Shown: positions 15,484-36,700 of the stretch, piece after piece
Layout of the letters: every line of letters starts with the position of its first letter
Position numbering within the stretch: position 1 is the first letter of the stretch
Translations under genes and position numbers: made by a program
The notes under the pieces: model-generated
What the model saw: the letters and a program-made list of their open reading frames with translations, nothing else
Told to the model about the DNA's origin: nothing
Databases searched by the model: none
NCBI GenBank assembly: GCA_002269645.1
Contig: NIVC01000806.1
Coordinates: forward strand, 6,787 to 70,786
DNA length: 64,000 nt
From: Macrostomum lignano
Lineage: Eukaryota
Direction: 5' to 3'

Positions 15484-16955
15484 AGACTTTAAATTAATTT
15501 TGTTTCGCAAAAAGCCACGGCAGAAACTCGGACTTAACTTTTTTGATTTGATCTGCTTTTTTTACCTATTGTTTACTATATTACAATCATGATATGCTGT
15601 TGTAACTGTCTTGAGTACCTGTTCACTTGTCAATGCATTGGTTTGATTTGAACCGTTTTCGATTAGCCAATATTTGTTATATTATACTCGATCAATTACT
15701 CGATCAATTATTTTCGATCAATTTATTATTTTTTTATCTCTCTTTTCAAGGTGTCACGTCAGCTTTACTCTTGCATGCTAATTAATTACTGTATGCTTAT
15801 ATATTTGTTTTCTGTAAGTATCATCCCTGCAGTTTATTATTTTTTTATATTTCTGTGTCTACCACTTCCATTTTGTGATCCTCTCTGAGATGTAGAGGTT
15901 TGCTCTTTACTATTGACTAGAGACCAAGCGTCGTAGTTTATCAGAAGCAAAAAGTGGTTATTTATTTAGCATTTTTTGTATGCTCTACTTATACGAGCGT
16001 AGTAGAAATAACTGAAAATTATGCTAATAATAATAATAATAAACTTTAACTTAGTACTCTACTTATAGTAGAAATGACAGAAAAATATGCGTATAAAATT
16101 AATAATAAACATTAACTTAGTACTCTACTTATAGTAGAAATATGAGGAAATGCGATAAAAATTTGCAATCCTAAGCTATACTAAATCGAGACAATGCCTA
16201 TTAGAATAATTTCAATATGTAATGTAGGCAGGTATTTCAGTGATATTAAAGGTCACGTGATCTTCAGGCCGCTGGAAAACCCCAGTTTAAGCCTAACTTT
16301 TTATCTTTCTCACATTTTCAAACAGAAGCTATAAAAAGGAAGAGAGCGGAATCAGTTCTGTTGCTTTTTTACTTTCTCAGCTAATTTCTTGATTCTACAG
16401 TCAGTTAATGTTATTAAAATGCTGATTTTGTCTATTTTATAACCCGAAGCACCAATTTGATCAGTTGAACTTTTTAAAAGTCTACTTAACATTGCAGCTA
16501 AATAAGCGTAAAGCACTTTTTTCTATGCTTATTTATTTGCATGAATATTTATATAAATATATATTATTATATATACCCTGCTGGATGTTTTGCTATACAA
16601 TTTTGCACTTTTTGCACTTTCAGCTTCTGTTCTTTGCGCGTTCGCTATTTTTGCGATTTTCAAAAATAAAAATTAGTACCAGTTATCGCTTTTAGTCACG
16701 CTTCTAGAGTTGCTCTTGTAACTTCTCTGTGAAATTATTTTTTACAATTAACCCAAACTTCACACTCCGGAGGCAAAATTGATATTGTGTCGGTTTTGTA
16801 CCGAAAAAAATAAATTATTTATCTATTGTCCTAATTGTTTCAGTTTAAATACTAATGTTCCGAACATACCTTGACAATGGCTTTATTAGTAGTTGTTTTA
16901 GTCTGTATCTTAATCGGCTATTGTTTGCGTTCAATTATTTGGGCTGAACTTTGCA

Positions 16956-17849: not shown

Positions 17850-18003
17850 ATGCAGACTCCTTTGCTTCATGCTCAAAATATGGCTTTTATTGGCCGGTGC
17901 TTCAATTTGTTGATTTGGTTTCTGGTTTCTATCTACGTAATTGTGCCTCTGATCGTCTACTTGTATCCTGGAATCCTTACGAGCGTGGTGTTCTTCAATT
18001 TGT
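17850..18003 (+). CDS. ABHD12: ABHD12-like alpha/beta hydrolase, exon 1 (N-terminal TM helix)
   Basis: MQTPLLHAQNMAFIGRCFNLLIWFLVSIYVIVPLIVYLYPGILTSVVFFNL, then donor t|gtaag at 18004 (phase 1). The start could instead be the ATG at 17880. Confidence 0.75.
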
Positions 18004-18021
18004 GTAAGATTTTTGTTTGAT

Positions 18022-19393
18022 ACCACCATGAGAATCAGTTTGATCCCACCACGAAAATTAGTTTGATCCCATCATGAGAATCAGTTTGATCCCATCATGA
18101 GAATCAGTTTGATCCCACCATGAGAATGAGTTTGATCCCATCATAAAAATTAGTTTGATCCCATCATGAGAATGAGTTTGATCCCATCATGAGTATCAGT
18201 TTGATCCCATCATGAGAATGAGTTTGATACCACCATGAGAATCAGTTTGATCCCATCATGAGAATCAGTTTGATCCCACCATGAAAATTAGTTTGATCCC
18301 ACCATGAGAATCAGTTTGATCCCACCATGAAAATTAGTTTGATCCCACCATGAGAATCAGTTTGATCCCATCATGAGAATCAGTTTGATCCCATCATGAG
18401 AATCAGTTTGATCCCATCATGAGAATCAGTTTGATCCCACCATGAGAATCAGTTTGATCCCATCATGAGAATCAGTTTGATCCCATCATGAGAATCAGTT
18501 TGATCCCATCATGAGAATCAGTTTGATCCCACCATGAGAATCAGTTTGATCCCACCATGAAAATTAGTTTGATCCCACCATGAGAATCAGTTTGATCCCA
18601 TCATGAGAATCAGTTTGATCCCATCATGAGAATCAGTTTGATCCCATCATGAGAATCAGTTTGATCCCACCATGAAAATTAGTTTGATCCCACCATGAGA
18701 ATCAGTTTGATCCCATCATGAGAATCAGTTTGATCCCATCATGAGAATCAGTTTGATCCCATCATGAGAATCAGTTTGATCCCACCATGAAAATTAGTTT
18801 GATCCCACCATGAGAATCAGTTTGATCCCATCATGAGAATCAGTTTGATCTCATCATGAGAATCAGTTTGATCCCATCATGAGAATGAGTTTGATCCCAT
18901 CATAAAAATTAGTTTGATCCCATCATGAGAATGAGTTTGATCCCATCATGAGTATCAGTTTGATCCCATCATGAGAATGAGTTTGATACCACCATGAGAA
19001 TCAGTTTGATCCCATCATGAGAATCAGTTTGATCCCACCATGAAAATTAGTTTGATCCCACCATGAGAATCAGTTTGATCCCACCATGAAAATTAGTTTG
19101 ATCCCACCATGAGAATCAGTTTGATCCCATCATGAGAATCAGTTTGATCCCATCATGAGAATCAGTTTGATCCCATCATGAGAATCAGTTTGATCCCACC
19201 ATGAAAATTAGTTTGATCCCACCATGAGAATCAGTTTGATCCCATCATGAGAATCAGTTTGATCCCATCATGAGAATCAGTTTGATCCCATCATGAGAAT
19301 CAGTTTGATCCCACCATGAAAATTAGTTTGATCCCACCATGAGAATCAGTTTGATCCCATCATGAGAATCAGCTTGATCCCACTGTGAGAATC
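18022..19393. repeat. 23-bp minisatellite (catgagaatcagtttgatcccat)n in ABHD12 intron 1
   Basis: About 59 units filling almost the whole intron. Confidence 0.96.
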
Positions 19394-19450
19394 ATTTGCG
19401 AATCATATTTACCTTTGACCCGAAGCCTCACTCTACTCCGCTCCTGGCAG

Positions 19451-19747
19451 ACTATTGTCCGCACTTCTCGAGAAACTTCTCAGACTTTGAGCACTACGGA
19501 CTTTCGCCAAACTCGACTCGGAATTTCTATTTGGCTAATTCTTTAGGTCACAAACTGGGCGTATGGCAGCTGGAGTCTGAGCCCTGCTCAACTCAGACCG
19601 AATTCGAAGCTAAGCTACTCGACGGCCGGCCAGTGCTGCTCTATTACCATGGCAACGCTTTGAATCGAGGCGGCCACCATATGGTTGACTTGTACAAGCG
19701 CCTGCTTAAGGAGAATGATGTGCATATTTTGGCTTTGGATTATCGAG
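19451..19747 (+). CDS. ABHD12: ABHD12-like, exon 2
   Basis: YCPHFSRNFSDFEHYGL..TRNFYL..LGVW..PVLLYYHGNALNRGG..LYK..HILALDYRG. Acceptor ggcag| and donor g|gtgtg. Confidence 0.9.
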
Positions 19748-19879
19748 GTGTGTAGAGCCATTCAGGATGTGTCTGGCGCTATCTAGAATTTGTGTACCGA
19801 CAAACTTAAAAACCAGACATTTAAAAAGAATTTCAAAATAACTAAAACATTTTAGCGGTTTCCCTTCTACCCAATCCAG

Positions 19880-20009
19880 GTTACGGTGACTCAGAAGGCC
19901 TTCTAGAAACTGAGATTGACGCAGTGGACGACGCTGAAGTGTTATTTAACTATGTCACAAAATCGGGAGTCAAGCGGCTGTACTTATGGGGCCATTCGTT
20001 AGGCACCGG
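19880..20009 (+). CDS. ABHD12: ABHD12-like, exon 3 (nucleophile motif)
   Basis: GYGDSEG..DAEVLFNYV..LYLWGHSLGTG. Acceptor tccag| and donor gg|gtgag. Confidence 0.92.
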
Positions 20010-20047
20010 GTGAGTGAGTGACGATCGATGCCCTTCATATAACACAC

Positions 20048-20687
20048 CAATCCTTCCCCTGATAACACGCCCACCACCTCGAAACACGCCCACCACCCCA
20101 AAACATGCCCACCACCCCAAAACACGCCCACCACCCCTCAAACACGCCCACCACCTCAAAACACGTCCACCACCCTAAACACGCCCACCACCCCTTAAAC
20201 ACGCTCACCACCACCAAACCTGCTCACCTCCCCAATACAAGCCCACCACCCCAAAACACGCCCACCCCTAAAACACGCCCACCCCTAAAACACCCCGACG
20301 GCCCCACCTCTAAAACACACCAATCACCCCAAAACACGCCCACCACCCCAAAACACGCCTATCACCCGAAAACACGCCAATCACCCCAAAACACGCCCAC
20401 CACCCCAAAACACGCCCACCCCTAAAACACGCCGAGGGCCCCAAAACACGCCCACCACCCCAAAACACCCCCACCCCTAAAACACGCCGACGGCCCCAAA
20501 ACAAGCCTACCACCCCAAAACACCCCACCCCTAAAACACGCCGACGGCCCCAAAACACGCCTACCAGCCCAAAACACCCCACCCCTAAAACACGCCGACG
20601 GCCCCAAAACACGCCTACCACCCCAAAACACCCCCACCCCTAAAACACACCGACGGCCCCAAAACACGCCCACCACCCGAAAACACG
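20048..20687. repeat. Degenerate ~20-bp AC-rich minisatellite (aaaacacgcccaccacccc) in ABHD12 intron 3
   Basis: Tandem imperfect units. Confidence 0.85.
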
Positions 20688-20848
20688 TAAATTACCTCTA
20701 AACAGGCTCACCATTGCCACCACCTTAAAACAAGCTGCCCCGAAAATCCACTGCTTGTATGTACGTTCTGTACATGTTAGAAAGCGTACAATATGTATAA
20801 CCTTACAACATAACAATTCTTCAGGCACAACTCTCCTTTCGTCTTCAG

Positions 20849-20972
20849 TGTCGTGTCCCATCTGGCCAAACGCCTGTCTGACAGTGGCCGCTTAAACCCA
20901 ATAGCTGGCCTGGTACTGGAGTCGCCATTTAATAACATTCGCGACGGTGTGCGTATGCATCATTTCAGCCTA
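20849..20972 (+). CDS. ABHD12: ABHD12-like, exon 4
   Basis: GVVSHLAKRLSDSGRLNPIAGLVLESPFNNIRDGVRMHHFSL. Acceptor ttcag| and donor |gtaag; phases are consistent. Confidence 0.9.
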
Positions 20973-21068
20973 GTAAGTGCCTTTTTGTAACAAAAATTAT
21001 GAACAAGAATTTCGTATGTACGACAGTACACACCCAGATGATCGAGGATAGTAGCTATCCCCAAGACG

Positions 21069-21223
21069 GGTCTACGAAGTTTGCTACGACGTTTGCCAGC
21101 CGACGTTTGCCAGCCGGACATTTGCAGGCGGCAATTGGTTAAAGAAGTATGCCCTCTCTAGGCTTACATGTATTTGCATTTAAAAACTGTGGACATAGCA
21201 CTAATCTAATTCCACCTCGCTCC

Positions 21224-21279
<56 letters not shown>

Positions 21280-21404
21280 GCTACTGCTGCTACTACTACT
21301 ACTACTACTACTGCTACTACTACTACTAATACTGCTACTACTACTACTACTACTGCTACTACTACTACTAATACTGCTACTACTACTACTACTACTGCTA
21401 CTAC

Positions 21405-21482
<78 letters not shown>

Positions 21483-22064
21483 AGGTTATTAACAAACTAC
21501 TGTTCAGGCTTATTGAAGTTATTGCTCTTGTCTGCCTAAATAGATAGGTAAAACTACAAAATAGAAGTTTCCATTGTCACAGTTGATGTCTATGAATGCC
21601 ATGGAATGGCCCTTTCCATCTCAGTGGCCAAACAAGCTAAGTGTTTACAAGCTAAATGGGAAAAGACTGAGACATCCATAATGGTATTGGCTTAGTCTCG
21701 CCTATATATACTTAACTCAAAAGCCAAACTCTGCTTAACGGAGTTAAGCCATGACAGCGTGCACTTGACAAGCTACATTGGAATTAATTCGCTTACGTTT
21801 GGATCTCCCAATGAACTGGGAAATATATAAGCCAGAATTATCGTTCAACTTTATAATATTTTCACATTCAAAGAAATTGTTGTTAAACTGGATGCTAGAT
21901 TGATGAACTGCATAATTTGTGTAGCTTTTGTTTTCGAACTTTGATACATGCGAATAATCGTCAAAAAGTTGGACTAAAAAACCGCTAAACTGCGAATATT
22001 TCAGTATCAAATTTTTCACTCACTGACTTAATGTTGGCTGGCAAACGTCGGCAGGCAAACGTCG
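21069..22064. mobile_element. MITE-like element with tandem-subrepeat inverted ends in ABHD12 intron 4
   Basis: cgacgtttgccagccgacgtttgccagcc (21087-21115) is inverted at 22036-22064 with one mismatch. It is flanked by a direct repeat gctat(c)n aagacg at 21054-21068 and 22064-22080. Confidence 0.6.
21225..21481. repeat. (TAC)n microsatellite
   Basis: About 85 trinucleotide units with tgc/taa interruptions. Confidence 0.97.
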
Positions 22065-22159
22065 CTATCCCCCCAAGACGTCAGGATCACGAACATGTGG
22101 GCGACCTATCCTAGGCTGTCCTTCCATCTTGAAGCTAGTAGTATTCATGGATAAATTCG

Positions 22160-23192
22160 CTGAGATTCAGTAGATAGATTCAGTGAGATTCAGTAGATAG
22201 ATTCACTGAGATTCAGTAGACAGATTCACTGAGATTCAGTAGATAGATTCACTGAGATTCAGTAGATAGATTCACTGAGATTCAGTAGATACGAGCGTAG
22301 ATTCAGTGAGATTCAGTAGATAGATTCACTGAGATTCAGTAGATAGATTCACTGAGATTCAGTAGATAGATTCACTGAGATTCAGTAGATAGATTCAGTG
22401 AGATTCAGTAGATAGATTCACTGAGATTCAGTAGATAAATTCAGTGAGATTCAGATAGATAGATTCTCTGAGATTCAGATAGATAGATTCAGTGAGATTC
22501 AGATAGATAGATTCACTGAGATTCAGTAGATAGATTCAGGGAGGTTCAGTGAGATCCTTGAGATTTACTGACGTTCAGTGAGATTCAATGAGAGTTAGTG
22601 AGATTCTGTGGGGCTCAGTGAGATTCAGTGGGGCTGAGTGAGATTCAGTGGGGCTGAGTGAGATTCAGTGAGATTCTGTGGGGCTCAGTGAGATTCAGTG
22701 GGGCTGAGTGAGATTCAGTGAAATTCTGTGGGGCTCAGTGAGATTCAGTGGGGCTGAGTGAGATTCAGTGAGATTCAGTGGGGCTGAGTGAGATTCAGTG
22801 GGGCTGAGTGAGATTCAGTGGGGCTGAGTGAGATTCTGTGGGGCTGAGTGAGATTCAGTGAAATTCTGTGGGGCTCAGTGAGATTCAGTGGGGCTGAGTG
22901 AGATTCAGTGAGATTCAGTGGGGCTGAGTGAGATTCAGTGAGATTCAGTGGGGCTGAGTGAGATTCAGTGAGATTCAGTGGGGCTGAGTGAGATTCAGTG
23001 GGGCTGAGTGAGATTCAGTGGGGCTGAGTGAGATTCTGTGGGGCTGAGTGAGATTCTGTGGGGCTCAGTGAGATTCTGTGGGGCTGAGTGAGATTCAGTG
23101 GGGCTCAGTGAGATTCAGTGGGGCTGAGTGAGATTCAGTGAGGCTCAGTGAGATTCAGTGGGGCTAAGTGAGATTCAGTGAGATTCAGTAGA
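22160..23192. repeat. Two abutting minisatellites sharing a gagattcagt core (23-bp unit to ~22540, then 10/20-bp units)
   Basis: (agatagattcactgagattcagt)n followed by (gagattcagtggggctgagt)n. Confidence 0.93.
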
Positions 23193-23603
23193 ATCTGTCA
23201 TACGGCCAATTGCTAGGCTGTCCTTCCGTGCGGCTTCAATTTAGTCGCACGCAGAAGTGATATTAATTAAGCTAATTAGTCAAATTCCCTCACCTCCTTG
23301 CTAAAGACTGAGAGACAGAGCGAGTATACAGGGGCAACGAAACCTTCGCGATTTAATATAAAAGAAAAAACGAAGCTACGGTTGTCTAATTGCATGTAGG
23401 TCTGTTAATTAAAGCCTCTAAAACTGACTGACTGACTTCTTTTACTTTGCTAATTGTAACGAGCATTGCTTTCGAGTTGCATAACGGATTTAAAAAATTA
23501 AAGAGGAGAAAAAAAGAGAGTAGACATCTAAGAGCATCATTTTTATTTAGTATATAAGACTGCAGGTCTGAGTCATAAGTTTTCGATCTTATAATGCTGT
23601 CTA

Positions 23604-23886
23604 GGGCCGTAGCTCAGCGGTCTAGCGTAGCGCTCTGATGTGCCAGCGGCCCAGGCTCGATTCCTAATTCTGCAGTCAAATTCATTTGGGGCTAAATTGG
23701 AATCTCGGCTTGGCTCTGCTCGTGCAATTAACGCCCTTGAGGCCCAACCATTAAGGCACAGTGAAGTGTACATGCCTAACGATAATATAAAGTTAGGGCC
23801 GCTGTACACTCCTGTGCGAGTGTGTGCCTGTGCGTATGACTGCGTACGTATCCGCGTGCTTGTATGCCTGCTCAGGGGAGTCGGCG
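23604..23886 (+). mobile_element. tRNA-derived SINE-like element (head 23604-23665; repeat body 23708-23886)
   Basis: A-box tagctcagcgg and B-box-like ggctcgattcc. Related body sequence occurs inverted at 42258-42396 and 43080-43160, and a truncated head copy at 24445-24476. Confidence 0.6.
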
Positions 23887-23966
23887 TTTGTGTAACAATA
23901 TTGCACAGGATGCTCATAGCCTCTTGCTTCGAATTAAATAAAGGCCTTCCTACCTCTCCTTGGCAG

Positions 23967-24296
23967 CCCTACCGTCTGCTGCCCTACTTCGAGCCCGTAT
24001 TTGTAGACGGAGTCGGCAAATGCGGCATCCGATTCGATTCGGATCGGAATCTGGCCAGGTTGAGCAGCCCGGTGCCCGTGCTGATCATTCACGCCCAGGA
24101 CGATCGGGTGGTGCCCATAGAGCTGGGCAGACAGCTCAGAGACTATCTGAACACGGCACGGGGTGGCGCCGATATTAGCGCCGTTCGTTTCTTAGAATTG
24201 CCGGCCAACAAAGGCTACAAGCACACCAGGGCGGTGGATGCGCCAGAGGTTTACGTTGAATTTCAGCGTCTAATTGAAACCACTCGAGGTTTATAG
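23967..24296 (+). CDS. ABHD12: ABHD12-like, exon 5 (catalytic Asp and His; 344 aa in total)
   Basis: PYRLLPYFEPVFVD..GIRFDSD..PVLIIHAQDDRVVPIELGRQL..GYKHT. Acceptor tggcag| at phase 0. The five exons sum to 1035 nt. Confidence 0.92.
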   Translation, partial: PYRLLPYFEPVFVDGVGKCGIRFDSDRNLARLSSPVPVLIIHAQDDRVVPIELGRQLRDYLNTARGGADISAVRFLELPANKGYKHTRAVDAPEVYVEFQRLIETTRGL

Positions 24297-24950
24297 ATTA
24301 TTTATTAGTGCAAGTCGTTACTAATAGTAGTTTTATGAGATTGAAAATTTCTATTTTTATACGGCTCAAAAATAGGATGGATTATTAATTACTGGTTTTG
24401 AAATTTATTGTTTTTACGATTTATAAGAAAGATTTGTAAGTTCCTATAATGCTGTCTAGGGCCGTAGCTCAGCGGTACATAGCTACCGATATGTAGTGTA
24501 AATCTCTTTATTAAATAGCGATTTTTAATAGTATGCTGTTATAAAAATTTTAGAACAAACGGAGAATAAAGAGAATTTTCAGTGATAGTGGAATTGTAAT
24601 TCACTCAGAATAGATTGGTGCTATCTGCCGATATGTATCGTAGGACACTTTGTTCGGGCGTATACGGATTTTTTTTCAAATTTCGTTTCTCAGAAATTTT
24701 CGAGCTAAATAATTAATTTTCTCGCGTGAAAATGTTTTTTATTTGCAAATAGGTATTCCGTTTCTATGCTTTGTGCTTAATTTCTCAAAACTAGTGATAT
24801 GTCAAGCAGTGCATAACTATTAGTTATTAATTAATCTAATTTCTTCTTTCACGATTTTTTAAGGATTTTACGTTTTGTCAACTCAATGTTTAATTCCTAA
24901 TTTATGGTTAAAAGCTAAAAAGTAGTAAGCTTAAGCGTTGAAGTTAAAGC

Positions 24951-25326
24951 GGATATAACCAGAAGGATCTAGAATACAACACGGATGTAACCCGAAAGAT
25001 CTAGAATACAACACGGATATAACCCAAAGGGTCTAGAATATAACACGGATATAACCCAAAGGGTCTAGAATATAACACGGATGTAACCCAAAGGGTCTAG
25101 AATATAACACGGATATAACCCAAAGGGTCTAGAATATAACACGGATATAACCCAAAGGGTCTAGAATATAACACGGATATAATCCAAAGGGTCTAGAATA
25201 TAACACGGATATAACCCAAAGGGTCTAGAATATAACACGGATATAACCCAAAGGGTCTAGAATATAACACGGATATAACCCATAGATCTAGAATATAACA
25301 TGGATATAACCCAAAGATCTAGAATA
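24951..25326. repeat. 32-bp minisatellite (ggatataacccaaagggtctagaatataacac)n
   Basis: About 12 tandem units, intergenic. Confidence 0.95.
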
Positions 25327-25732
25327 GGTTTTAATCTCCTTACTTTAGCTTGCCTTGCAAAAGTTCTATAATAGTAGTCATCTATATAACGGTATAGTAG
25401 TCATATAATTGTTTACATTCGATGTTACACCCGTTATATAAGCTATACTGTAGTTGATTTTTGTCACAAAATGCATTGCGCTGTTACATGTACTATGATT
25501 TCCTATTTACTAGATTTTTATATTGCTACAAATACTTTAATTGTTAGCGTTTTATTATCTAATTAGCAAATAAACTTCTAGCAGATTCAATATACTTTAA
25601 GCCATAATAGTTTAAATTTAATTTCGTCAATTTTTCGTGAAATCAATAAAGTCAAAAATTATAGATCGTGCATAATATTATACCTACTATACTTATGATA
25701 ATATTTCAGCTTCTCTCGTAAAAAATCCTGAA

Positions 25733-26161
25733 ATGCGCTTAACAAAGCTACTAACAGTAGCATCATTTGCATTCTGTCTGGCCTCGCTCTGCCAGTGCCG
25801 CTACACGCCCGATTGGGCCTCGTTGGATTCGCGCCCTCTGCCCGCCTGGTACGACCAGAGTAAAATTGGCATCTTTATCCACTGGGGCGTGTTCTCGGTG
25901 CCCTCCTACCACAGCGAGTGGTTCTGGTGGGACTGGCAGGGCACGGACAAACAGAAGGACGTGGTGAACTTTATGAAACAGAATTATCCTCCCGGTTTCA
26001 CCTACGCCGATTTTGCGCCAAAGTTTAAGGCGACATTTTTTAATCCGGACCAATGGGCGGAGCTTTTCGACTCGGCTGGTGCAAAGTACGTCGTGTTCAC
26101 TAGCAAGCATCACGAGGGCTATTGCAACTGGGATACTGCTTATAGTTTCAATTGGAACTCG
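25733..26161 (+). CDS. FUCA: Alpha-L-fucosidase (GH29), exon 1 with signal peptide
   Basis: Signal peptide, then [57 protein letters not shown]. Donor tcg|gtacg at phase 0. Confidence 0.95.
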
Positions 26162-26257
26162 GTACGTTTCAAGGTCGATTTTGTTGTATTTTAAGAAGGC
26201 CTAATTTTTCTGTCTTTTAAAGGCCGAATTTCGTATCTTCAATGCCGATTTTCCAGC

Positions 26258-27400
26258 GTTTTGAAGGCCGATATTTGCTGGGTTTTGAAGGCCGATTGTT
26301 GCAGGGTTTTGAAGGCCGATATTCGCAGGGTTTTGAAGGCCGATTGTTGCAAGGTTTTGAAGGCCGATATTCGCAGGGTTTTGAAGGCCGATTGTTGCAA
26401 GGTTTTGAAGGCCGATATTCGCAGGGTTTTGAAGGCCGATTGTTGCAGGGTTTTGAAGGCCGATATTCGCTGGGTTTTGAAGGCCGATTGTTGCAAGGTT
26501 TTGAAGGCCGATATTCGCAGGGTTTTGAAGGCCGATTGTTGCAGGGTTTTCAAGGCCGATTGTTCCAGGGTTTTGAAGTCCGATTGTTGCAGGGTTTTGA
26601 AGGCCATTTATTGCAGGTTTTTGAAGGCCGATAGTTGCAGGTTTTTGAAGGCCGATTGTTTCAGGGTTTTGAAGGCCGATCGTTCCAGGGTTTTGAAGGC
26701 CGATATTCGCAGGGTTTTGAAGGCCGATATTCGCAGGGTTTTGAAGGCCGATTGTTGCAGGGTTTTGAAGACCGATTGTTGCAGGGTTTTGAAGACCGAT
26801 TGTTGCAGGTTTTTGAAGGCCGATATTCGCGGGGTTTTGAAGGCCGATTGTTGCAGGGTTTTGAAGGCTGATTGTTGCAGGGCTTTGAAGGCCGATTGTT
26901 GCAGGGTTTTCAAGGCCGATTGTTCCAGGGTTTTGAAGGCCGATTGTTGCAGGGTTTTGAAGGCCGTTTATTGCAGGTTTTTGAAGGCCGATAGTTGCAG
27001 GTTTTTGAAGGCCGATTGTTCTAGGGTTTTGAAGGCCGATTGTTCCAGGGTTTTGAAGGCCGATCGTTCCAGGGTTTTGAAGGCCGATTGTTGCAGGGTT
27101 TTGAAGGCCGATTGTTGCAGGGTTTTGAAGGCCGATTGTTGCAGGGTTTTGAAGGCCGATTGTTGCAGGGTTTTGAAGGCCGATATTCGCGGGGTTTTGA
27201 AGGCCGATTGTTGCTGGGTTTTGAAGGCCTATTGTTGCAGGGTTTTCAAGGCCGATTGTTGCAGGGTTTTCAAGGCCGATTGTTGCAGGGTTTTGAAGAC
27301 CGATTGTTGCAGGGTTTTGAAGACCGATTGTTGCAGGGTTTTGAAGACCGATTGTTGCAGGGTTTTGAAGACCGATTGTTGCAAGGTTTTGTAGGCCGAT
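26258..27400. repeat. 24-bp minisatellite (ttttgaaggccgattgttgcaggg)n in FUCA intron 1
   Basis: About 47 units. It explains the VLKADCCR pseudo-ORF. Confidence 0.96.
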
Positions 27401-27743
27401 CTTTGCGACCTTTTCAAAGCCAATTCTCGCTGCATTTTAAACATTGTTTTTTGTTTTACTCCAAGGGACAACTTTTGAGCTATTGACCTCCTAGAGACAA
27501 TTTTACATCCTTTGGAAGAGAAATTCTTTTAGTTAGAAGAATGTGTTTGTTACATTTTTAACAAGTTGTTTATAGTTAATCGACCCCTGGTCCGATTCCG
27601 TGCGTTACAATATTGTCAAACCTATTTTATTGTCAAAATTATCAAATTGGCGCGCTTGTACATGCTCAGTCAGCGGAATGGCATATCAAAATCAGGCTCC
27701 GATGTGAACTCATATTTTCAATGCTTAAAACCTGGATTCGCAG

Positions 27744-28248
27744 AAGCAAGTCGGCCCCAACCGCGACCTCGTTGCTGATTTGGCGGCCGCGATCCGGAAG
27801 CGTCCCGGCCTTCGGTTCGGCCTCTACCATTCCCTGTACGAATGGTTCAACCCGCTGTACCAGAATGACCAGCGCTCCCAGTTCAAGACCAGAGATTTTG
27901 TCCTGTCTAAAACCATGCCGGAGCTGTACGAGTTGGTTAATCGCTTCAAACCTGATGTCGTATGGAGCGATGGAGACTGGGACGCCCCGGCGGAGTATTG
28001 GAATTCCACCGGGTTCTTAGCCTGGCTTTATAACGACAGTCCAGTCAATGATAGCGTAGTTACTAACGATCGTTGGGGCAAAGGTGTCATGTGCAATCAC
28101 GGCGGTTATTACACCTGTCAGGACCGGTACAATCCGGGCATTTTGCAGCCTCATAAATGGGAGAATTGCATGACTCTGGATAAGCAGAGCTGGGGCTATC
28201 GGCGGGATGCCCGGCTGGCCGACTATCTGACGCCTCAGGAGCTGCTGA
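27744..28248 (+). CDS. FUCA: Alpha-L-fucosidase, exon 2
   Basis: [64 protein letters not shown]. Acceptor cgcag| and donor a|gtgagt (phase 1). Confidence 0.94.
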
Positions 28249-28430
28249 GTGAGTAGGCCTGATTGTAATTGATCATTTTAGTGCCCTGATTTGACGTCGG
28301 TATATTGACTCTTGATTTCTTGCTCTTTGAAGTCACGTGACTTAGTTTACTTTAGTTGGGTCTAACGTAACCTGCTCCGTTGACTTTGGTGTCACGTGAC
28401 TGCATTCTCCATAGTTTTTTATAGTTGTTT

Positions 28431-29797
28431 GTCACGTGACCTCATAGATTGCTGTAGTTGTGTGTGGCACGTGACCTCATAGATTGCTGTAGTTGTGTGT
28501 GGCACGTGACCTCATAAATTGCTGTAGTTGTGTGTGTCACGTGACCTCATAGATTGCTGTAGTTGTGTGTGTCACGTGACCTCATAGATTGCTGTAGTTG
28601 TGTGTGTCACGTGACCTCATGGATTGCTGTAGTTGTGTGTGTCACGTGACCTCATAGATTGCTGTAGTTGTGTGTGTCACGTGACCTCATGGATTGCTGT
28701 AGTTGTGTGTGTCACGTGACCTCATAGATTGCTGTAGTTGTGTGTGTCACGTGACCTCATGGATTGCTGTAGTTGTGTGCGTCACGTGACCTCATAGATT
28801 GCTGTAGTTGTGTGTGTCACGTGACCTCATAGATTGCTGTAGTTGTGTGTGTCACGTGACCTCATGGATTGCTGTAGTTGTGTGTGTCACGTGACCTCAT
28901 AGATTGCTGTAGTTGTGTGTGTCACGTGACCTCATGGATTGCTGTAGTTGTGTGCGTCACGTGACCTCATAGATTGCTGTAGTTGTGTGTGTCACGTGAC
29001 CTCATGGATTTCTGTAGTTGTGTGTGTCACGTGACTTCATAGATTGCTGTAGTTGTGTGTGTCACGTGACCTCATGGATTGCTGTAGTTGTGTGTGTCAC
29101 GTGACCTCATGGATTGCTGTAGTTGTATGCGTCACGTGACCTCATAGATTGCTGTAGTTGTGTGTGTCACGTGACCTCATGGATTGCTGTAGTTGTGTGT
29201 GTCACGTGACCTCATAGATTGCTGTAGTTGTGTGTGTCACGTGACCTCATGGATTGCTGTAGTTGTGTGTGTCACGTGACCTCATGGATTGCTGTAGTTG
29301 TGTGTGTCACGTGACCTCATAGATTGCTGTAGTTGTGTGTGTCACGTGACCTCATGGATTGCTGTAGTTGTGTGCGTCACGTGACCTCATAGATTGCTGT
29401 AGTTGTGTGTGTCACGTGACCTCATGGATTTCTGTAGTTGTGTGTCACGTGACTTCATAGATTGCTGTAGTTGTGTGTGTCACGTGACCTCATGGATTGC
29501 TGTAGTTGTGTGTGTTACGTGACCTCATGGATTGCTGTAGTTGTATGCGTCACGTGACCTCATAGATTGCTGTAGTTGTGTGTGTCACGTGACCTCATGG
29601 ATTGCTGTAGTTGTGTGTGTCACGTGACCTCATAGATTGCTGTAGTTGTGTGTGTCACGTGACCTCATGGATTGCTGTAGTTGTGTGTGTCACGTGACCT
29701 CATGGATTGCTGTAGTTGTGTGTGTCACTTGACCTCATGGATTGCTGTAGTTGTGTGTGTCACGTGACCTCATGGATTGCTGTAGTTGTGTGTGTCA
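28431..29797. repeat. 35-bp minisatellite containing the palindrome GTCACGTGAC (E-box/CLEAR consensus) in FUCA intron 2
   Basis: 39 units of gtcacgtgacctcat(a/g)gattgctgtagttgtgtgt, 35 of them with the perfect 10-mer. Two further isolated copies lie at 28332 and 28391. Confidence 0.96.
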
Positions 29798-29823
29798 CTA
29801 CTAGATGTTCTCTCCCCCCACAG

Positions 29824-30308
29824 GCACCCTAGCAACCACAATCAGCTGCGGCGGCAACCTGCTAGTTAACGTCGGTCCAACAGCCGACGGCACAATCGAC
29901 CCGGTGATGGAGGAGCGGCTCAGGCAACTGGGCAGCTGGCTCAGAACCAACGGCGAAGCGGTGTACAACTCGACACCCTGGAGTAGGCAGAATGACACCG
30001 CCACCAGCGGAGTGTGGTACACACAGCGGGCCGGCTCTGTGTACGCCTTCTTGCTGACCTGGCCGGCTAACGATCGGCTGTTGCTAGGCTCCGTTGCCAT
30101 GGCAACCAATGTCACCCTTTTGGGTCATCCGAAGCGACCGGCATTTTCAGCTACGCCGAAGGGTTTGTCGGTGGCTCTGCCAAGTCTGGATGGCACAGGG
30201 CTGCGCTGGGCTTGGGTGCTGCGGCTCGACGGAGTGAAGCCTCCAAAGTCAGCGGAGCGGCCGCGCATCTTCGAGCCGATGCCGAATAGAGAGTTCGATC
30301 GGCTGTAG
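29824..30308 (+). CDS. FUCA: Alpha-L-fucosidase, exon 3 (472 aa in total)
   Basis: Joins as ELL-S-TLATTISCGGNLLVNVGPTADG..NGEAVYNSTPW..VWYT. Acceptor cacag|. The three exons sum to 1419 nt. Confidence 0.94.
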
Positions 30309-30384: not shown

Positions 30385-30875
30385 GGTTTTCACTCCAGGT
30401 CTGTCACTCTGATATTGTCACTGCGATTGTCACTCTAAGATTGTCACTCTGAGATTTTCACTCTGAAATTGTCACTCTGAGATTGTCACGCTAAGTTTGT
30501 CACTCTGAGATTGTCACTCTGAGATTGTCACTCTAAGCTTGTCACTCTAAGCTTGTCACTCTGAGATTGTCACGCTAAGTTTGTCACTATGAGATTGTCA
30601 CTCTAAGATTGTCACTCTAAGCTTGTCACTCTGAGATTGTCACTAAGATTTTCACTCTAAGATTGTCACTCTAAGCTTGTCACTCTGAGATTGTCACTAA
30701 GATTTTCACTCTAAGATTGTCACTCTAAAATTATCACTCTGAGATTGTCACTCTAAGCTTGTCACTCTGAGATTGTCACGCTAAGTTTGTCACTCTGATA
30801 TTGTCACTAATTTTGTCACTCTGAGATTGTCAGTAAGATTGTCACTCTGAGATTGTCACTCTGGGATTTTCACTG
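30385..30875. repeat. 14-bp minisatellite (gattgtcactctga)n
   Basis: About 35 imperfect units downstream of the FUCA stop codon. Confidence 0.92.
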
Positions 30876-31638: not shown

Positions 31639-32064
31639 ATGTGGACTCTCGAGTCTGTGTGCTCACAGCTGTCAGACGCGTCAGACAGGCGCGACAACAA
31701 TGACGTCACCCTGACTGACGAGCACCTGGAACGGCTGGCCTATCATTTCGGCGCCAATTTGCTGACATCGGCACTCGAGCTAGTCGACTCGGCGGTGAAG
31801 TCGTCATCAACAATGACTCTGATTAGCGCGGCACAATCTGGTCGATGGTTGCACCGGATTTCTGGCAGCTCAGGTGCGGTTTATTACTGCCTGATGGAGC
31901 GCCATTATTGCGCCTGCCCGGCGCACAGACTGGGCGTTGTACGCCGCGCCGAGGCGCCGATGTGTAAGCACGCGCTGGCGCTCCGCCTGGCCGATGCGTT
32001 GCGCCTAATTGGCTCCGAGACCGTTGATGAAGATCAGTTTGATGAGATGCTCAAGCACATGTGA
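31639..32064 (+). CDS. ZSWIM7: SWIM-type zinc finger protein 7 (SWS1, Shu complex), single coding exon
   Basis: SALELVD..TLISAAQSGR..RISGSSG..YYCL..HYCACPAH..MCKHALAL, giving the SWIM signature CxC..CKH. The length of 141 aa matches the family. Confidence 0.88.
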   Translation: MWTLESVCSQLSDASDRRDNNDVTLTDEHLERLAYHFGANLLTSALELVDSAVKSSSTMTLISAAQSGRWLHRISGSSGAVYYCLMERHYCACPAHRLGVVRRAEAPMCKHALALRLADALRLIGSETVDEDQFDEMLKHM

Positions 32065-32963: not shown

Positions 32964-33794
32964 ATGGCGTCGCAAGCAGCCAGTGAATTACCTCTCAATG
33001 ATCCAGCCATGGCTGAGGCCTGGCTGCAAAGTTTTGAAGCACTGTGCAGGCACAAAAAACTGCGAGATACAAACGAAGAGAAGCAGGTGACAGACCTCTT
33101 CCTTGCTCGAGCAGGAATCAATGCAGTCCGATCCGTCTCTATCATGGCAAAGCCGAAAAACATTGAGGATATGACCTTCAAGGACATCAAGAAAATGATC
33201 ATCGGGCGACTCCAGCCCAAAAAGAAACTGGTGATTGCAGAGCGCACAAGGTTCATGTCCCAGCGGCAGCTGTCAACAGAGTCGGCCCAGCAGTTCGCGG
33301 AGCGCTTGAGAGACGCGGCAAAGCACTGTGAGTTTGACAAGCTCAACGAAAAAGACTGCAAACAGTCAGCCGAGGATGACTTGATCCAAACACTGCTGAT
33401 CAGCGGCTTGTGCGACCACAGCCAGCGGACTAAAACACTTGAGCACATTCAGAGCTCTGAGAATCCAGTGACTCTGGACACGTGTCTGCAGTACATCCAG
33501 CAGTTAGAGCTCATCCAGAGCTACAGCTCAAGCGACCGATCTGCTGAAGCCCGAGAGCCTAGCAGAAGCTCCGAGACGGCTGAGAGTTCGACACCAGTTG
33601 CCAGCATCGACAGGAACCGCAATAGCGGTGCTCAGTGCAGGTCGTGTGGTCTGCAGCACCAGCCAGGCAAATGCCCTGCATTCGGGAAGACCTGTAACAA
33701 GTGCCACCGCAGGAACCACTTTGCTGCAGTCTGCAGGAGCAGCGCCAAGTCCAAGTCGGTTGCACCTGCCCATGAAATCGACACGAGTGAGTGA
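32964..33794 (+). CDS. Gag of Gypsy element 2
   Basis: AEAWLQSFEALCR..LVIAERTRF..Q..ESAQQFAERLRDAAKHCEF, and zinc knuckles CRSCGLQH..C and CNKCHRRNHFAAVC. Confidence 0.92.
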   Translation: MASQAASELPLNDPAMAEAWLQSFEALCRHKKLRDTNEEKQVTDLFLARAGINAVRSVSIMAKPKNIEDMTFKDIKKMIIGRLQPKKKLVIAERTRFMSQRQLSTESAQQFAERLRDAAKHCEFDKLNEKDCKQSAEDDLIQTLLISGLCDHSQRTKTLEHIQSSENPVTLDTCLQYIQQLELIQSYSSSDRSAEAREPSRSSETAESSTPVASIDRNRNSGAQCRSCGLQHQPGKCPAFGKTCNKCHRRNHFAAVCRSSAKSKSVAPAHEIDTSE

Positions 33795-33795
33795 G

Positions 33796-36700
33796 CAGGC
33801 AGGCATCTACACCATCGTCGGCAACGAGAGCGGAAGCGGCAGCATAAAAACTGTGCTCATTGAAGGCAAGCCGTTCAAAATGCAGCTCGACTCTGGATCC
33901 GGTGCGAGCATCATTCCGATAAACTTCTGGAGGAGCCTCGGTGAGCCCAAGCTACGAAAGTCCAAGCTGAGACTGCGACAATTTGACGGAACGGTCATCA
34001 GAACTAGAGGATGCTTCACGGCGCTCATCGAAGTCGGGAGACAAATCGCCTGTGCGGACGTGACGGTCACCGAATGCACAAAGGAGCACGGCCTCATCGG
34101 AACAGACGTGCTGGACTTCAAGCTGGACACAGCGACTGTCAATCAAGTGGAGCGCAGCAGCAAACCGCTAGGCAAGCTCAAAGGTTTCCGTGCTCGGGTC
34201 CTGCTCAGGGAGAACGCTCAGCCCAGCTTCTTCGATGCCCGGCCGCTCCCGATTCATCTCAAGCCGCTGGTGGTGGCTAAGCTGCGGACGATGATCGACG
34301 CCGGGATCCTCGAGCCCGTGCCGCCAGGCGGCAGCAGTTGGGCGTCGCCCATTGTGGTGGTGCGCAAGGCCGACGGAGACCTGAGAATCTGCTCCGACTA
34401 CAAGGTCGGGGTGAACCCGAAGATCTGCTCTGACGCCTACCCACTGCCCAACATCGAGCAAGCCTTCAGTGCCCTGGCAGGTATGAAGCACTTCGCAATT
34501 GTAGACTTAACAAATGCCTACAACCAGATTGAGCTAGACGAGGCCTCCAGAGAAATACTCACCATCAACACGCCCCTAGGCCTGCTCAGATGGACGCGCA
34601 TGCCATACGGGGTGAAGACGGCCAGTGCGCAGTTCCAGGCTGCCATGGAGGCAACGGTCGGCGGTGCGGTCAGCAACCTGGTGATCTACCAAGACGACAT
34701 GTGCGTTGGCGCCACCACAGCGGACGAATTGGACAGCAAAGTCCGGGACCTGCTGAGAGCGCTTTCTGATGCCGGCATGTCAATCAACGAAAAAAAGTGC
34801 GTTTTCCGCAGCACGGAAATCAGTTTCCTTGGCTACCGCATCGCGGCTGACGGCGTGCGCCCTGATCGGAAGCTGGTGGAGAAAATCCTCGGCGTGAGCA
34901 CCCCGGCGAGCAAAAAGGAACTCGAATCGTTTCTGGGAATGACGGTGTACTACTCGCGCTACATCAAGTCCTACTCGGAGAAGACCGAGCCGCTGACCGA
35001 GCTGCGGAGCAAGAAAGTCGCGTTCCATTGGGGACCTCGGCAGCAGAAAGCGTTTGACGAGCTCAAGCAGGCGCTTGCAGCTTCCCCAGTGGTCCGAATC
35101 TTCGATGCAAGAAAGCGCACAACTCTGACTACTGACGCCAGCGAAAAGGCCATAGCAGCAATCCTCTCTCAGGACGAGCACCCAGTGATGTACCTGTCAA
35201 GACGGCTGACACCGGCTGAGAGAAATTACTCGAATATCGAGCGGGAGGCCCTGGCTGTGGTGTGGGCCACTCAGAGAGCCAGACACTTTCTTCTCGGCAG
35301 CAAGTTTGTGCTCCAGTGCGATCATCAACCATTGGAGTTCATTTTTAGTCCGTCTCGGGAGCTTCCAAAGGTCACATCGGCTAGGATAATGCGCTGGGCG
35401 TTGCAGCTGTCGGCCTTCGACTACGAAATCTCGTACATCAAGGGCAGCTGCATCCCGCATGTCGACGCGCTGTCTCGAATTGAATTCAAGGAGGAAGGCG
35501 ATGGAGACGACTGCCAGGAAAGCTTCGTTCACTGGACAGAGACGGAGGTGCTCAAGCTGGAGCAGATCAGAGACGCCACTGACAATGACCCGGTACTCGC
35601 CAGCGTCAAGCGCAGGATCCGCAGCAATGCGTGGAACAACTGCTCGGCAGCGGAGCGACCGTATAAAGCCGTCCGCCAGCAGCTCTCAGTGGAGAATGGC
35701 GTCGTCTGCCTGAGAGACCTGGTGGTCCCGCCTAGCCGGCTGCGGCAAGACGTGCTGCGAGCGGCTCACGGCGACTCGCACTGCGGTGCCCTAGCGACAA
35801 GAAATCGACTCAAGCTGGAAGCCTGGTGGCCGGGTCACTGCGAGGACGTCGAAAACTTCGTCAAGCAATGCCAGCGATGCGCGGAGATCCGTCCAATGCC
35901 TGCCAGAACGTGCCACACCTGGCCGGCTGAAGATGGTCCCTGGAGACGTGTGCACATGGACCATGCTCACGTTCCCGGCTTCGGCCTGCTGCTCATTGTG
36001 GTGGACGCCTTCTCCGGCTGGCCGGAAGCGGTGCCTGTTGCCGACAAGAGCGCGACGACGGTCATCAAGGTACTCCGCCTGATTTTCTCCCGCCTGGGTG
36101 TGCCGCATACCTTGGTGGCGGACAATGCTCCGGAGTTCCGTGACCAGCAGCTGCACGAGTGGCTCAAGAAGATCGGCTGCTCGCCGATGCACTCGCCGCC
36201 GTATCATCCGCAGTCAAACGGGTGCGCCGAGCGCATGGTCCAGACCGTCAAGAAGGGGCTGCGGGCCTTCGCCGTGCACCAGGGCCGGTTCGACGCGTAC
36301 CTCGCCAAGCTGCTGCTTAACTACCGGGCCACTCCGCGGGGCGACGGGCGTGGCAGTCCATCTGCGCTTATGGGGCGACAGCTGCGAAGTCCGCTGACCC
36401 TCCAATTCGACACCGATGCGCCGCTCGTCTACCGGTCGCGACCGGGGGGGCCGGCTGAGACCGTCCGCTTTGTGGTACAGGCCGGCCACAACACGGCCGT
36501 GGTCACCCGGGACAAGGATGACAGGCCTGTGCTGGCACACCGGGATCAGCTGCGCTTGCGTCCGAGTCCAAGCCGGGCGGAAGTTACGGACAACACTGAC
36601 GACAGCGGCCGGGACCCTGACGATGCCGGCCGGAGCCCTGACGACGGCGACCGGAACCCTGACGAAGGCGGCCGGAACCCTGACGAAGGCGGCCGGAACC

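What the first reader, a model, noticed from the sequence alone, without database searches (positions are those of the whole stretch)
28332..29797. About 37 perfect CLEAR/TFEB motifs amplified as a minisatellite inside a lysosomal hydrolase gene
Seen: intron 2 of the alpha-L-fucosidase gene holds 39 tandem 35-bp units, 35 of which contain the perfect palindrome GTCACGTGAC. Two more perfect copies (28332, 28391) lie just upstream with unrelated spacers, as if the array grew from a pre-existing motif cluster. No other array in the window carries the motif. Established: GTCACGTGAC is the CLEAR consensus bound by MiT/TFE factors (TFEB; HLH-30 in nematodes) at lysosomal genes, and GH29 fucosidase is a lysosomal enzyme. 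Inference: the array could act as a repeat-built enhancer whose copy number tunes a lysosomal gene, or as a TFEB/MITF sponge. A near-match (GTCACGTGAT) also sits at 16252-16261 upstream of ABHD12.
Basis: partly seen in the sequence, partly recalled or inferred. Interest (0 to 1): 0.8.

Follow-up and report, generated by a model that had tools for sequence, protein, structure and literature searches.

The report
CLEAR-motif minisatellite in flatworm fucosidase intron
An intron of a lysosomal-type fucosidase gene in the flatworm Macrostomum lignano holds 37 exact copies of the DNA motif that switches on lysosomal genes in other animals; they arose when one unit of an older motif cluster was recently amplified, and whether the array regulates the gene is plausible but untested.

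Summary
The window is Macrostomum lignano. The array fills 88% of intron 2 of a three-exon GH29 alpha-L-fucosidase gene.

Two other gene copies give a natural series. A near-identical copy (L003) has the same array minus one 5-unit block. A roughly 5%-diverged copy (L001) has 13 decayed units, 7 with perfect motifs. In L001 the motif is the best-conserved 10-mer of the unit.

A conserved TCACGTGA sits 78 nt upstream of a TATA box ahead of ABHD12, the upstream gene that appears to be co-transcribed with the fucosidase. Sea-urchin and limpet fucosidase genes also carry CLEAR-type sites close to their start codons.

Against a special role: tandem repeats cover 44% of the window, every intron here holds a minisatellite, and all arrays vary in copy number between copies. 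No binding or expression data exist. The motif also fits USF-type factors.

Verdict: a real, probably functional E-box cluster, whose recent expansion is probably neutral.

The parts
16250..16261 (.). Single near-CLEAR E-box GGTCACGTGATC (core TCACGTGA). It lies 1.6 kb upstream of the ABHD12 start codon (17850).
   Evidence: It is the only TCACGTGA in the window outside fucosidase intron 2. It is invariant in L003 and L004.
16330..16337 (+). TATAAAAA, a TATA-box-like element 78 nt downstream of the E-box. It is the putative core promoter of the ABHD12-fucosidase transcription unit (inferred).
   Evidence: Sequence; invariant in all three copies. No transcription start-site data are available.
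17850..24296 (+). ABHD12-like hydrolase gene, upstream partner of the fucosidase. All three of its introns hold minisatellites.
   Evidence: tblastn of P0122; arrays; Pfam labels.
25710..26161 (+). Fucosidase exon 1. The mRNA 5' end lies at the splice acceptor tttcag|C (25709/25710); the coding sequence starts at 25733.
   Evidence: The fused UniProt model P0122 splices ABHD12 (...ETTR) onto this acceptor.
26162..27743 (+). Intron 1, mostly a 24-bp minisatellite (26244-27400, 48 copies).
27744..28248 (+). Fucosidase exon 2.
   Evidence: 99.4-100% identical in L001 and L003.
28249..29823 (+). Intron 2 (1575 nt, GTGAGT...CACAG).
   Evidence: The same intron is 1400 nt in L003 and 608 nt in L001.
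28319..28417 (.). Three old, decayed repeat units: perfect motifs at 28332-28341 and 28391-28400, and a decayed motif CTAACGTAAC at 28362-28371.
   Evidence: The first 169 nt of the intron are 99.4% identical to L001, against about 95% or less for other non-coding DNA.
28418..29799 (.). Homogeneous 35-bp minisatellite of 39 units plus a truncated unit, with 35 perfect GTCACGTGAC. Consensus unit: TGTAGTTGTGTGTGTCACGTGACCTCATGGATTGC.
28628..28977 (.). Two tandem copies of a 5-unit (175-bp) block (28628-28802 and 28803-28977). L003 has only one copy. This is the only difference between the two arrays.
   Evidence: Unit-variant strings.
28908..29745 (.). Internal 12-unit duplication (28908-29327 and 29328-29745, about 420 bp each). 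It shows growth by block duplication.
   Evidence: ACELAADABAAB / ACENAGDABAAH.
29824..30308 (+). Fucosidase exon 3, including the stop codon.

Best explanation
Intron 2 of the M. lignano GH29 fucosidase gene holds an old cluster of CLEAR-type E-boxes (core TCACGTGA). The cluster was itself born as a minisatellite.

In the older gene copy (L001) it survives as 13 decayed units. There the motif has been kept better than the spacers.

In the lineage of this window and of L003, one of those units was recently re-amplified to 34-39 copies by block duplication. That means unequal exchange or replication slippage, possibly helped by hairpins between neighbouring palindromes. The amplification overwrote the remaining old units and about 70 nt of unique intron.

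I infer that the motifs are bound by a bHLH-leucine-zipper factor, most likely the MiT/TFE orthologue. The cluster would then act as an intronic enhancer of the ABHD12-fucosidase transcription unit, together with the conserved promoter-proximal TCACGTGA at 16250-16261.

I regard the jump from about 7 to 32-37 perfect sites as a nearly neutral overshoot of the minisatellite instability typical of this genome, not as adaptive tuning.

Shown: the anatomy, the copy-number series, the direction of change, and the preferential conservation of the motif. Inferred: factor binding, enhancer activity and co-transcription with ABHD12.
For: There are 37 exact 10-mers against 0.01 expected. The consensus units of the window's roughly 18 larger arrays total about 396 nt, so the chance that one of them contains a given 10-mer is about 4e-4.

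Paralogue series: L003 has 34 units and 32 motifs; L001 has 13 decayed units and 7 perfect motifs.

In L001 an alignment that does not anchor on the motif picks exactly GTCACGTGAC as the best-conserved 10-nt window, at 0.89 against 0.71 for the rest of the unit. A neutral duplication-and-decay simulation gives P of about 0-0.012 for that pre-specified window. The motif-anchored count is 7.7% mismatches in the motif against 28-45% in the spacers.

The first 169 nt of the intron, holding the old motifs, are 99.4% identical between copies whose other non-coding DNA is 89-95% identical.

The only other TCACGTGA in 64 kb lies 78 nt upstream of a TATA box ahead of ABHD12. It is invariant in all three copies.

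Orthologues: sea urchin has three sites against 0.10 expected, at -191 and -173 of one fucosidase gene and -150 of the next. Lottia has a perfect 10-mer at -68. Both species also have an adjacent TCATGTGAC.

Literature: the CLEAR consensus; FUCA2 cited as a TFEB target; a Mitf-like gene in planarians; tandem-repeat enhancers and an E-box VNTR as precedents.
Against: There are no binding, chromatin or expression data.

Tandem repeats cover 44% of the window and 54% of the fucosidase gene span. Every intron of both genes holds a minisatellite. All arrays differ in copy number among the three loci. An expanding array here therefore needs no functional explanation.

Control arrays also show uneven conservation along the unit, with contrasts up to 0.15 against 0.17 here. 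For the best window wherever it falls, the simulated P is only 0.06-0.10.

In the young array, variant columns are as frequent in the motif (3 of 10) as outside it (6 of 25).

The cluster lies about 2.6 kb inside the gene and about 12 kb from the putative promoter, unlike classical promoter-proximal CLEAR sites.

Five of seven orthologue loci lack a promoter-proximal site.

The motif also fits USF and other class-B E-box factors.

Very large homotypic motif clusters can be repressed rather than active.

The finding was picked out by eye from a scan, so the look-elsewhere effect is unknown.
Confidence: 0.45

Rival explanations
1. This is a neutral minisatellite. The array and its decayed predecessor are ordinary products of the tandem-repeat-rich M. 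lignano genome. The match to the CLEAR motif inside a lysosomal-type gene is a coincidence picked out by the scan, and nothing binds there with any consequence.
For: Simple and tandem repeats make up 15% of the genome (PMC5730564) and 44% of this window. Every intron of ABHD12 and the fucosidase holds an array. All arrays vary in copy number between loci. Growth was by block duplication. Mutations in the young array do not avoid the motif. Control arrays show conservation contrasts up to 0.15.
Against: It does not explain why the pre-specified motif is the best-kept 10-mer in the decayed L001 cluster. It does not explain why the intron's first 169 nt are as conserved as exons. It does not explain why the only other TCACGTGA in the window sits at a conserved TATA-proximal position. 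It does not explain why fucosidase genes of a sea urchin and a limpet carry the same motif at their promoters.
Confidence: 0.35
2. It is a functional E-box cluster, but it is read by a different bHLH-zipper factor (USF-like, Mlx/Max-family or Hairy/DEC-like). It would then be a general enhancer, silencer or boundary unrelated to coordinated lysosomal regulation.
For: USF1 binds CACGTG and drives the E-box-bearing TYMS VNTR (PMC7712088). From my own knowledge, the extended unit TGTCACGTGACC matches 11 of the 12 bases of the USF palindrome GGTCACGTGACC.
Against: The host gene is of a lysosomal type. The limpet and sea-urchin fucosidase promoters pair the motif with TCATGTGAC. From my own knowledge, TCATGTGAC is an M-box form typical of MiT/TFE sites rather than USF sites. 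The flanking T/A of TCACGTGA is the MiT/TFE signature.
Confidence: 0.12
3. The effect is structural. The 10-bp palindrome in every unit lets neighbouring units pair as hairpins in single-stranded DNA or in the pre-mRNA. This would drive the array's instability, or influence splicing of the intron, without any transcription factor.
For: Four units folded as single-stranded DNA pair neighbouring palindromes into 10-11-bp stems (-19.6 kcal/mol, z = -3.2). The array grew and shrank in whole-unit blocks.
Against: Other arrays in the window expand just as much without palindromes. A 10-bp stem with a 25-nt loop is weak. This reading does not explain motif conservation in decayed units with variable spacing, or the promoter sites in other phyla.
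Confidence: 0.05
4. It is a transcription-factor sink. The 69-76 perfect sites carried by the three gene copies would titrate MiT/TFE away from other targets.
For: This rests on arithmetic only. A random 760-Mb genome would hold about 700 perfect 10-mers, so these loci could hold roughly a tenth of them (inference).
Against: There are no data on factor abundance or occupancy. The older copy manages with 7 sites. Large homotypic clusters may be packed into closed chromatin.
Confidence: 0.03

Closest known systems
CLEAR elements of the TFEB/MiT-TFE lysosomal gene network (Sardiello 2009; Palmieri 2011, as cited in PMC12427801 and the reviews found)
   Same: The 10-mer GTCACGTGAC is identical. 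The host gene is a lysosomal-type acid hydrolase. A single promoter-side TCACGTGA is also present (16250-16261). Fucosidase genes of a sea urchin and a limpet carry the same motif within 200 bp of their starts.
   Different: Classical CLEAR sites are one to a few copies close to the transcription start. Here there are 37 copies in an intron, generated by tandem amplification. Binding and responsiveness are untested, and the flatworm factor is unidentified.
TYMS enhancer-region VNTR (TSER): 28-bp repeats carrying a USF1 E-box (PMC7712088)
   Same: It is a minisatellite in which each unit carries an E-box for a bHLH-zipper factor. Alleles differ both in unit number and in units that have lost the site.
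   Different: TSER has 2-5 units in the 5' region, with an imperfect E-box (CACTTG). It has published binding and expression data. The flatworm array has 39 units, is intronic, and has no functional data.
MORC3-repressed tandem-repeat enhancer of IFNB1 with 45 PU.1 motifs (PMC13373173)
   Same: It is a tandem repeat that amounts to a very large homotypic cluster (tens of copies) of one transcription-factor motif near a functionally matched gene.
   Different: It involves a different factor family, is a distal element in mammals, and has been shown to be both repressed and a potent enhancer. That precedent warns that a large cluster may be silenced rather than active.
Synthetic multimerised CLEAR reporters (for example 4xCLEAR-luciferase; my own knowledge)
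   Same: They are head-to-tail copies of the CLEAR motif used as a TFEB-responsive enhancer.
   Different: They are artificial, have four copies and sit next to a minimal promoter. The flatworm array is natural and about ten times larger.

Membership tests
CLEAR element (MiT/TFE-responsive E-box) | Sequence matches the consensus GTCACGTGAC (core TCACGTGA) | tested here: met
   37 exact matches, 0.01 expected.
CLEAR element (MiT/TFE-responsive E-box) | Lies at a lysosomal or autophagy gene | tested here: met
   GH29 alpha-L-fucosidase with PF01120 and PF16757 and an N-terminal signal-like sequence. Lysosomal location of this flatworm enzyme is inferred from its orthologues.
CLEAR element (MiT/TFE-responsive E-box) | Promoter-proximal position (typically within a few hundred bp of the transcription start) | tested here: not met
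   The cluster lies in intron 2, about 2.6 kb from the mRNA 5' end at 25710 and about 12 kb from the putative TATA box at 16330. Only the single site at 16250-16261 is promoter-like.
CLEAR element (MiT/TFE-responsive E-box) | Bound by a MiT/TFE factor and confers starvation- or TFEB-dependent expression | not testable with these tools
   This needs ChIP or CUT&RUN, EMSA, reporters and RNAi.
CLEAR element (MiT/TFE-responsive E-box) | A MiT/TFE orthologue exists in the organism | not tested
   Only indirect support: a planarian Mitfl1 is reported (PMC8698962). A search for Macrostomum plus MITF found nothing relevant.
Minisatellite / VNTR | Head-to-tail units of 10-100 bp | tested here: met
   Period 35, 39.5 copies, 95% matches.
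Minisatellite / VNTR | Copy number varies between alleles or gene copies | tested here: met
   39 units in the window, 34 in L003, 13 decayed units in L001.
Minisatellite / VNTR | Growth by block duplication (higher-order structure) | tested here: met
   A 5-unit and a 12-unit internal duplication.
Tandem-repeat enhancer / homotypic motif cluster | Each unit carries the same transcription-factor motif | tested here: met
   35 of 39 units are perfect and 4 have one mismatch.
Tandem-repeat enhancer / homotypic motif cluster | Motif kept by selection while the rest of the unit drifts | tested here: inconclusive
   In L001 the motif is the best-conserved 10-mer. P is about 0.01 for the pre-specified window and 0.06-0.10 for any window. 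Control arrays reach similar contrasts.
Tandem-repeat enhancer / homotypic motif cluster | Enhancer activity that depends on the motifs and on copy number | not testable with these tools
   This needs transgenic reporters. Transgenesis exists for this species (PMC5730564).
Dispersed satellite or transposon-borne repeat family | The same unit occurs at unrelated loci | tested here: inconclusive
   It is absent from the rest of the 64-kb window and from the flanks of L001, L003 and L004, and is found only in the syntenic intron. The M. lignano genome itself could not be scanned.

The most novel reading that the evidence does not exclude
Minisatellite amplification is building or rebuilding a lysosomal-gene enhancer in real time. 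Three copies of one gene in a single laboratory line carry 7, 32 and 37 perfect CLEAR sites. This would be a natural allelic series in which repeat number sets how strongly a CLEAR-network gene responds to MiT/TFE, or soaks up a measurable share of the factor.
Probability: 0.15. Interest if true: 0.75.

Novelty: new member of a known kind. Interest (0 to 1): 0.5.

Why it matters
If the cluster is bound and active, the CLEAR/MiT-TFE logic of lysosomal gene control would extend to flatworms. It would also be a clear case of a regulatory element created and resized by tandem-repeat turnover. The older decayed version and two expanded versions sit side by side in one genome. M. lignano can be made transgenic, so the effect of 0, 13, 34 or 39 units can be measured directly. 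If the cluster is not active, the case is a useful warning: in repeat-rich genomes even a perfect, functionally matched motif array can arise without function.

Tried and rejected
1. A first motif-independent alignment of arrays to concatenated consensus units, using Biopython's global aligner, slipped out of register. I replaced it with my own wrap-around dynamic programming.

2. The motif-anchored conservation test favours the motif by construction. I kept it only as an upper bound and relied.

3. The locus tags looked like proof that ABHD12 and the fucosidase share a transcription unit. However, the tag Mlig019617 is also carried by a gypsy pol protein on another contig. The tag therefore names a transcript cluster, and I downgraded co-transcription to an inference resting on the g1/g2 pair, the fused UniProt model and the splice acceptor.

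4. I tried to find a flatworm MiT/TFE or TFEB literature link. Only a planarian Mitfl1 mention turned up.

5. The gypsy pol search was meant to supply random M. lignano loci for a background sample. It would have covered only about 0.2 Mb, so I used the remaining look-ups for fucosidase orthologues instead.

6. Transposon origin: nothing suggests it. The decayed units in L001 look like an old minisatellite. I did not search formally for terminal repeats or target-site duplications.

7. No outgroup Macrostomum species appeared among the listed fucosidase hits in the protein collection, so the orthologous intron could not be compared.

8. The third, 79%-identical fucosidase paralogue (P0008) has no contig on record.

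Full report
**1. What is there**

The window comes from the flatworm Macrostomum lignano. My spliced gene model is 100% identical to the deposited protein PAA76652.1, which lies on contig NIVC01000806.1.

GTCACGTGAC occurs 37 times, all between 28332 and 29768. Shuffled sequence expects 0.01.

Tandem Repeats Finder reports a 35-bp array at 28422-29798 with 39.5 copies and 95% matches. Cut into units, it has 39 full units (28418-29780) and a 19-nt stub. Thirty-five units carry the perfect motif and four carry a single mismatch.

The host gene is a GH29 alpha-L-fucosidase (PF01120, E=2e-133, plus PF16757). It has three coding exons: 25733-26161, 27744-28248 and 29824-30308. Intron 2 spans 28249-29823, and the array fills 88% of it.

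**2. Context**

Tandem repeats cover 44% of the window, or 27% without the 14.6-kb terminal satellite. They cover 54% of the fucosidase gene span. About 18 arrays are longer than 200 bp.

All five introns of ABHD12 and the fucosidase hold a minisatellite. The published genome paper reports 15% simple and tandem repeats. It also reports large duplicated blocks, because the sequenced DV1 line carries extra chromosomes (PMC5730564). An array in this intron is therefore the local norm. Only its content is unusual.

**3. Three copies of the locus**

| Locus | Contig | Identity to window | Intron 2 | Units | Perfect motifs |
|---|---|---|---|---|---|
| window | NIVC01000806.1 | – | 1575 nt | 39 + stub (plus 3 old decayed units) | 37 |
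| L003 | NIVC01001014.1 | 98-100% | 1400 nt | 34 + stub (plus the same old units) | 32 |
| L001/L004 | NIVC01000040.1 | 98-99% exons, 89-95% non-coding | 608 nt | 13 decayed | 7 |

Identities are, and intron lengths and motif counts.

- **L003.** Its array matches the window's unit by unit, except that the window has one extra 5-unit (175-bp) block.
- **Internal structure.** Both arrays contain a 12-unit internal duplication, so growth was by block duplication.
- **L001.** Its 13 units are spaced 29-66 nt apart. Six carry one to three mismatches in the motif.
- **Shared flanks.** The window's two upstream motifs, and a third decayed one (CTAACGTAAC, 28362-28371), are the first three of those old units. 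They are shared by all copies.
- **Origin of the array.** L001's fourth unit is nearly identical to the unit amplified in the window.
- **What was lost.** In the window the homogeneous array runs straight into the last 24 nt of the intron. It replaces L001's units 5-13 and about 70 nt of unique sequence.

L001's units are far more diverged from each other than the loci are from each other. The decayed cluster is therefore the older state, and the homogeneous array is a recent re-expansion of one unit. It corrects the claim of "unrelated spacers".

All other arrays of the region are also present at the same relative positions in the other loci, with different copy numbers. One 23-mer, for example, has about 18 copies in the window against 90 in L001.

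**4. Is the motif under constraint?**

- **Anchored on the motif.** L001's units show 7.7% mismatches in the ten motif columns, against 28% upstream and 45% downstream. This test is biased toward the motif.
- **Not anchored.** A wrap-around alignment that knows nothing of the motif still picks exactly GTCACGTGAC as the best-conserved 10-nt window. The score is 0.89 against 0.71 for the rest, a contrast of 0.17. Control arrays reach 0.03-0.15.
- **Simulation.** Under neutral duplication and decay, a pre-specified window reaches 0.17 with P of about 0-0.012. The best window wherever it falls does so with P of 0.06-0.10.
- **Intron flank.** The first 169 nt of the intron, with the old motifs, differ at one position between the window and L001. 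Neighbouring non-coding DNA differs at 5-11%.
- **Young array.** Variant columns are as common in the motif (3 of 10) as outside it (6 of 25). Redundant new copies are therefore not individually protected.

Taken together, constraint on the old cluster is suggested but not proven.

**5. Wider evidence linking the motif to this gene**

The fucosidase mRNA starts at a splice acceptor 23 nt before its ATG. A UniProt gene model splices ABHD12's last coding exon onto that acceptor. In the paralogue the two genes bear the tags g1 and g2 of one transcript cluster. Many M. lignano transcripts are polycistronic and trans-spliced. I infer that the two genes share a promoter upstream of ABHD12.

The only TCACGTGA in the window outside intron 2 lies in that upstream region. 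It is GGTCACGTGATC at 16250-16261, 78 nt upstream of TATAAAAA. Both elements are invariant in all three copies.

I also surveyed seven fucosidase loci from other invertebrates, taking each gene plus 5 kb on either side.

| Species | Locus | TCACGTGA found (expected) | Position |
|---|---|---|---|
| S. purpuratus (sea urchin) | L005 | 3 (0.10) | -191 and -173 of one gene; perfect 10-mer at -150 of the tandem neighbour |
| Lottia gigantea (limpet) | L009 | 1 (0.09) | perfect 10-mer at -68 |
| Aplysia californica | L008 | 2 (0.29) | intronic |
| Saccoglossus kowalevskii | L010 | 1 (0.16) | -1.9 kb |
| Daphnia pulicaria | L006 | 0 (0.15) | – |
| Acanthaster planci | L007 | 0 (0.19) | – |
| Lineus longissimus | L011 | 0 (0.27) | – |

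In both the sea urchin and Lottia a TCATGTGAC lies next to the perfect site. From my own knowledge this is an M-box form typical of MiT/TFE sites.

Three of about nine gene starts carry a site within 200 bp. The chance per 200-bp window is about 0.002. The link between fucosidase genes and CLEAR-type sites is therefore recurrent, though not universal.

**6. Mechanism and rivals**

- **Best reading (0.45).** This is an old intronic cluster of CLEAR-type E-boxes, bound by a bHLH-zipper factor, most likely MiT/TFE. It acts with the promoter-side site. Its recent re-expansion is a nearly neutral by-product of local minisatellite instability.
- **Rival 1 (0.35).** A purely neutral minisatellite with a coincidental motif.
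- **Rival 2 (0.12).** A different E-box factor such as USF, which drives the E-box-bearing TYMS VNTR.
- **Rival 3 (0.05).** A structural effect. Neighbouring palindromes pair in single-stranded DNA (z = -3.2).
- **Rival 4 (0.03).** A factor sink.

The human IFNB1 tandem-repeat enhancer has 45 PU.1 motifs. It shows that such clusters can be potent and can also be actively repressed.

**7. Novelty and verdict**

Motif-bearing tandem repeats that act as enhancers are known. So are CLEAR sites at lysosomal genes. This would be a new member of the former kind, carrying the latter motif, in a flatworm. It comes with a natural three-step copy series and an available transgenesis method.

No function has been shown, and the repeat-rich setting lowers the surprise. 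Interest: 0.5.

Noticed in passing
window 49381-64000: A 20-bp satellite (AGCTGATGAAAAGCCAATCA) runs for about 734 copies at 88% matches, to the end of the window. It makes up 23% of the window.
   Followed up: no
window 32964-36831: A Ty3/gypsy-type retrotransposon: a gag-like ORF at 32964-33794, and a pol ORF at 33598-36831 with protease, RT, RNase H and integrase domains. It is present in this copy of the locus but absent from L001 and L003, so it is a recent insertion or haplotype difference.
   Followed up: partly
window 30919 to about 38400, against L003 14648-14650: L003 is otherwise 98-100% identical to the window. It lacks about 7 kb that includes a 141-aa ORF (31639-32064, no Pfam match), CT-rich arrays, the retrotransposon and most of the 33-bp array.
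   Followed up: partly
window 24287-25710: ABHD12 and the fucosidase appear to be co-transcribed. A UniProt model splices ABHD12 (...ETTR, donor at 24287/24288) onto the acceptor at 25709/25710, just ahead of the fucosidase ATG. NCBI annotates the pair as g1 and g2 of one transcript cluster. This looks like a trans-spliced, operon-like unit.
   Followed up: partly
window 16250-16337; L003 about 1698-1785; L004 about 8949-9036: A conserved E-box (GGTCACGTGATC) lies 78 nt upstream of TATAAAAA, 1.6 kb ahead of the ABHD12 start codon. It sits inside a 55-nt block that is invariant in all three copies. It looks like a core promoter.
   Followed up: partly
window 13162-46278, against L001, L003 and L004: Nearly every minisatellite of the region recurs at the same relative position in the paralogous loci with a very different copy number. 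The 23-mer ATTCAGTAGATAG... has about 18 copies here and 90 in L001. The 14-mer TGTCACTCTGAGAT has 34 here and 94 in L001. This is a ready-made data set on minisatellite turnover.
   Followed up: partly
L005 4810-4835 and 15517-15543; L009 4933-4958: Sea-urchin and limpet fucosidase genes carry CLEAR-type sites 70-190 bp upstream of their start codons. In two cases the site is paired with TCATGTGAC. Two tandem sea-urchin paralogues both have them.
   Followed up: partly
window 30402-30874: The 14-bp array just downstream of the fucosidase stop codon has the unit TGTCACTCTGAGAT. It begins with TGTCAC, the same half-site as the 35-mer's TGTCACGTGAC. This may be coincidence.
   Followed up: no
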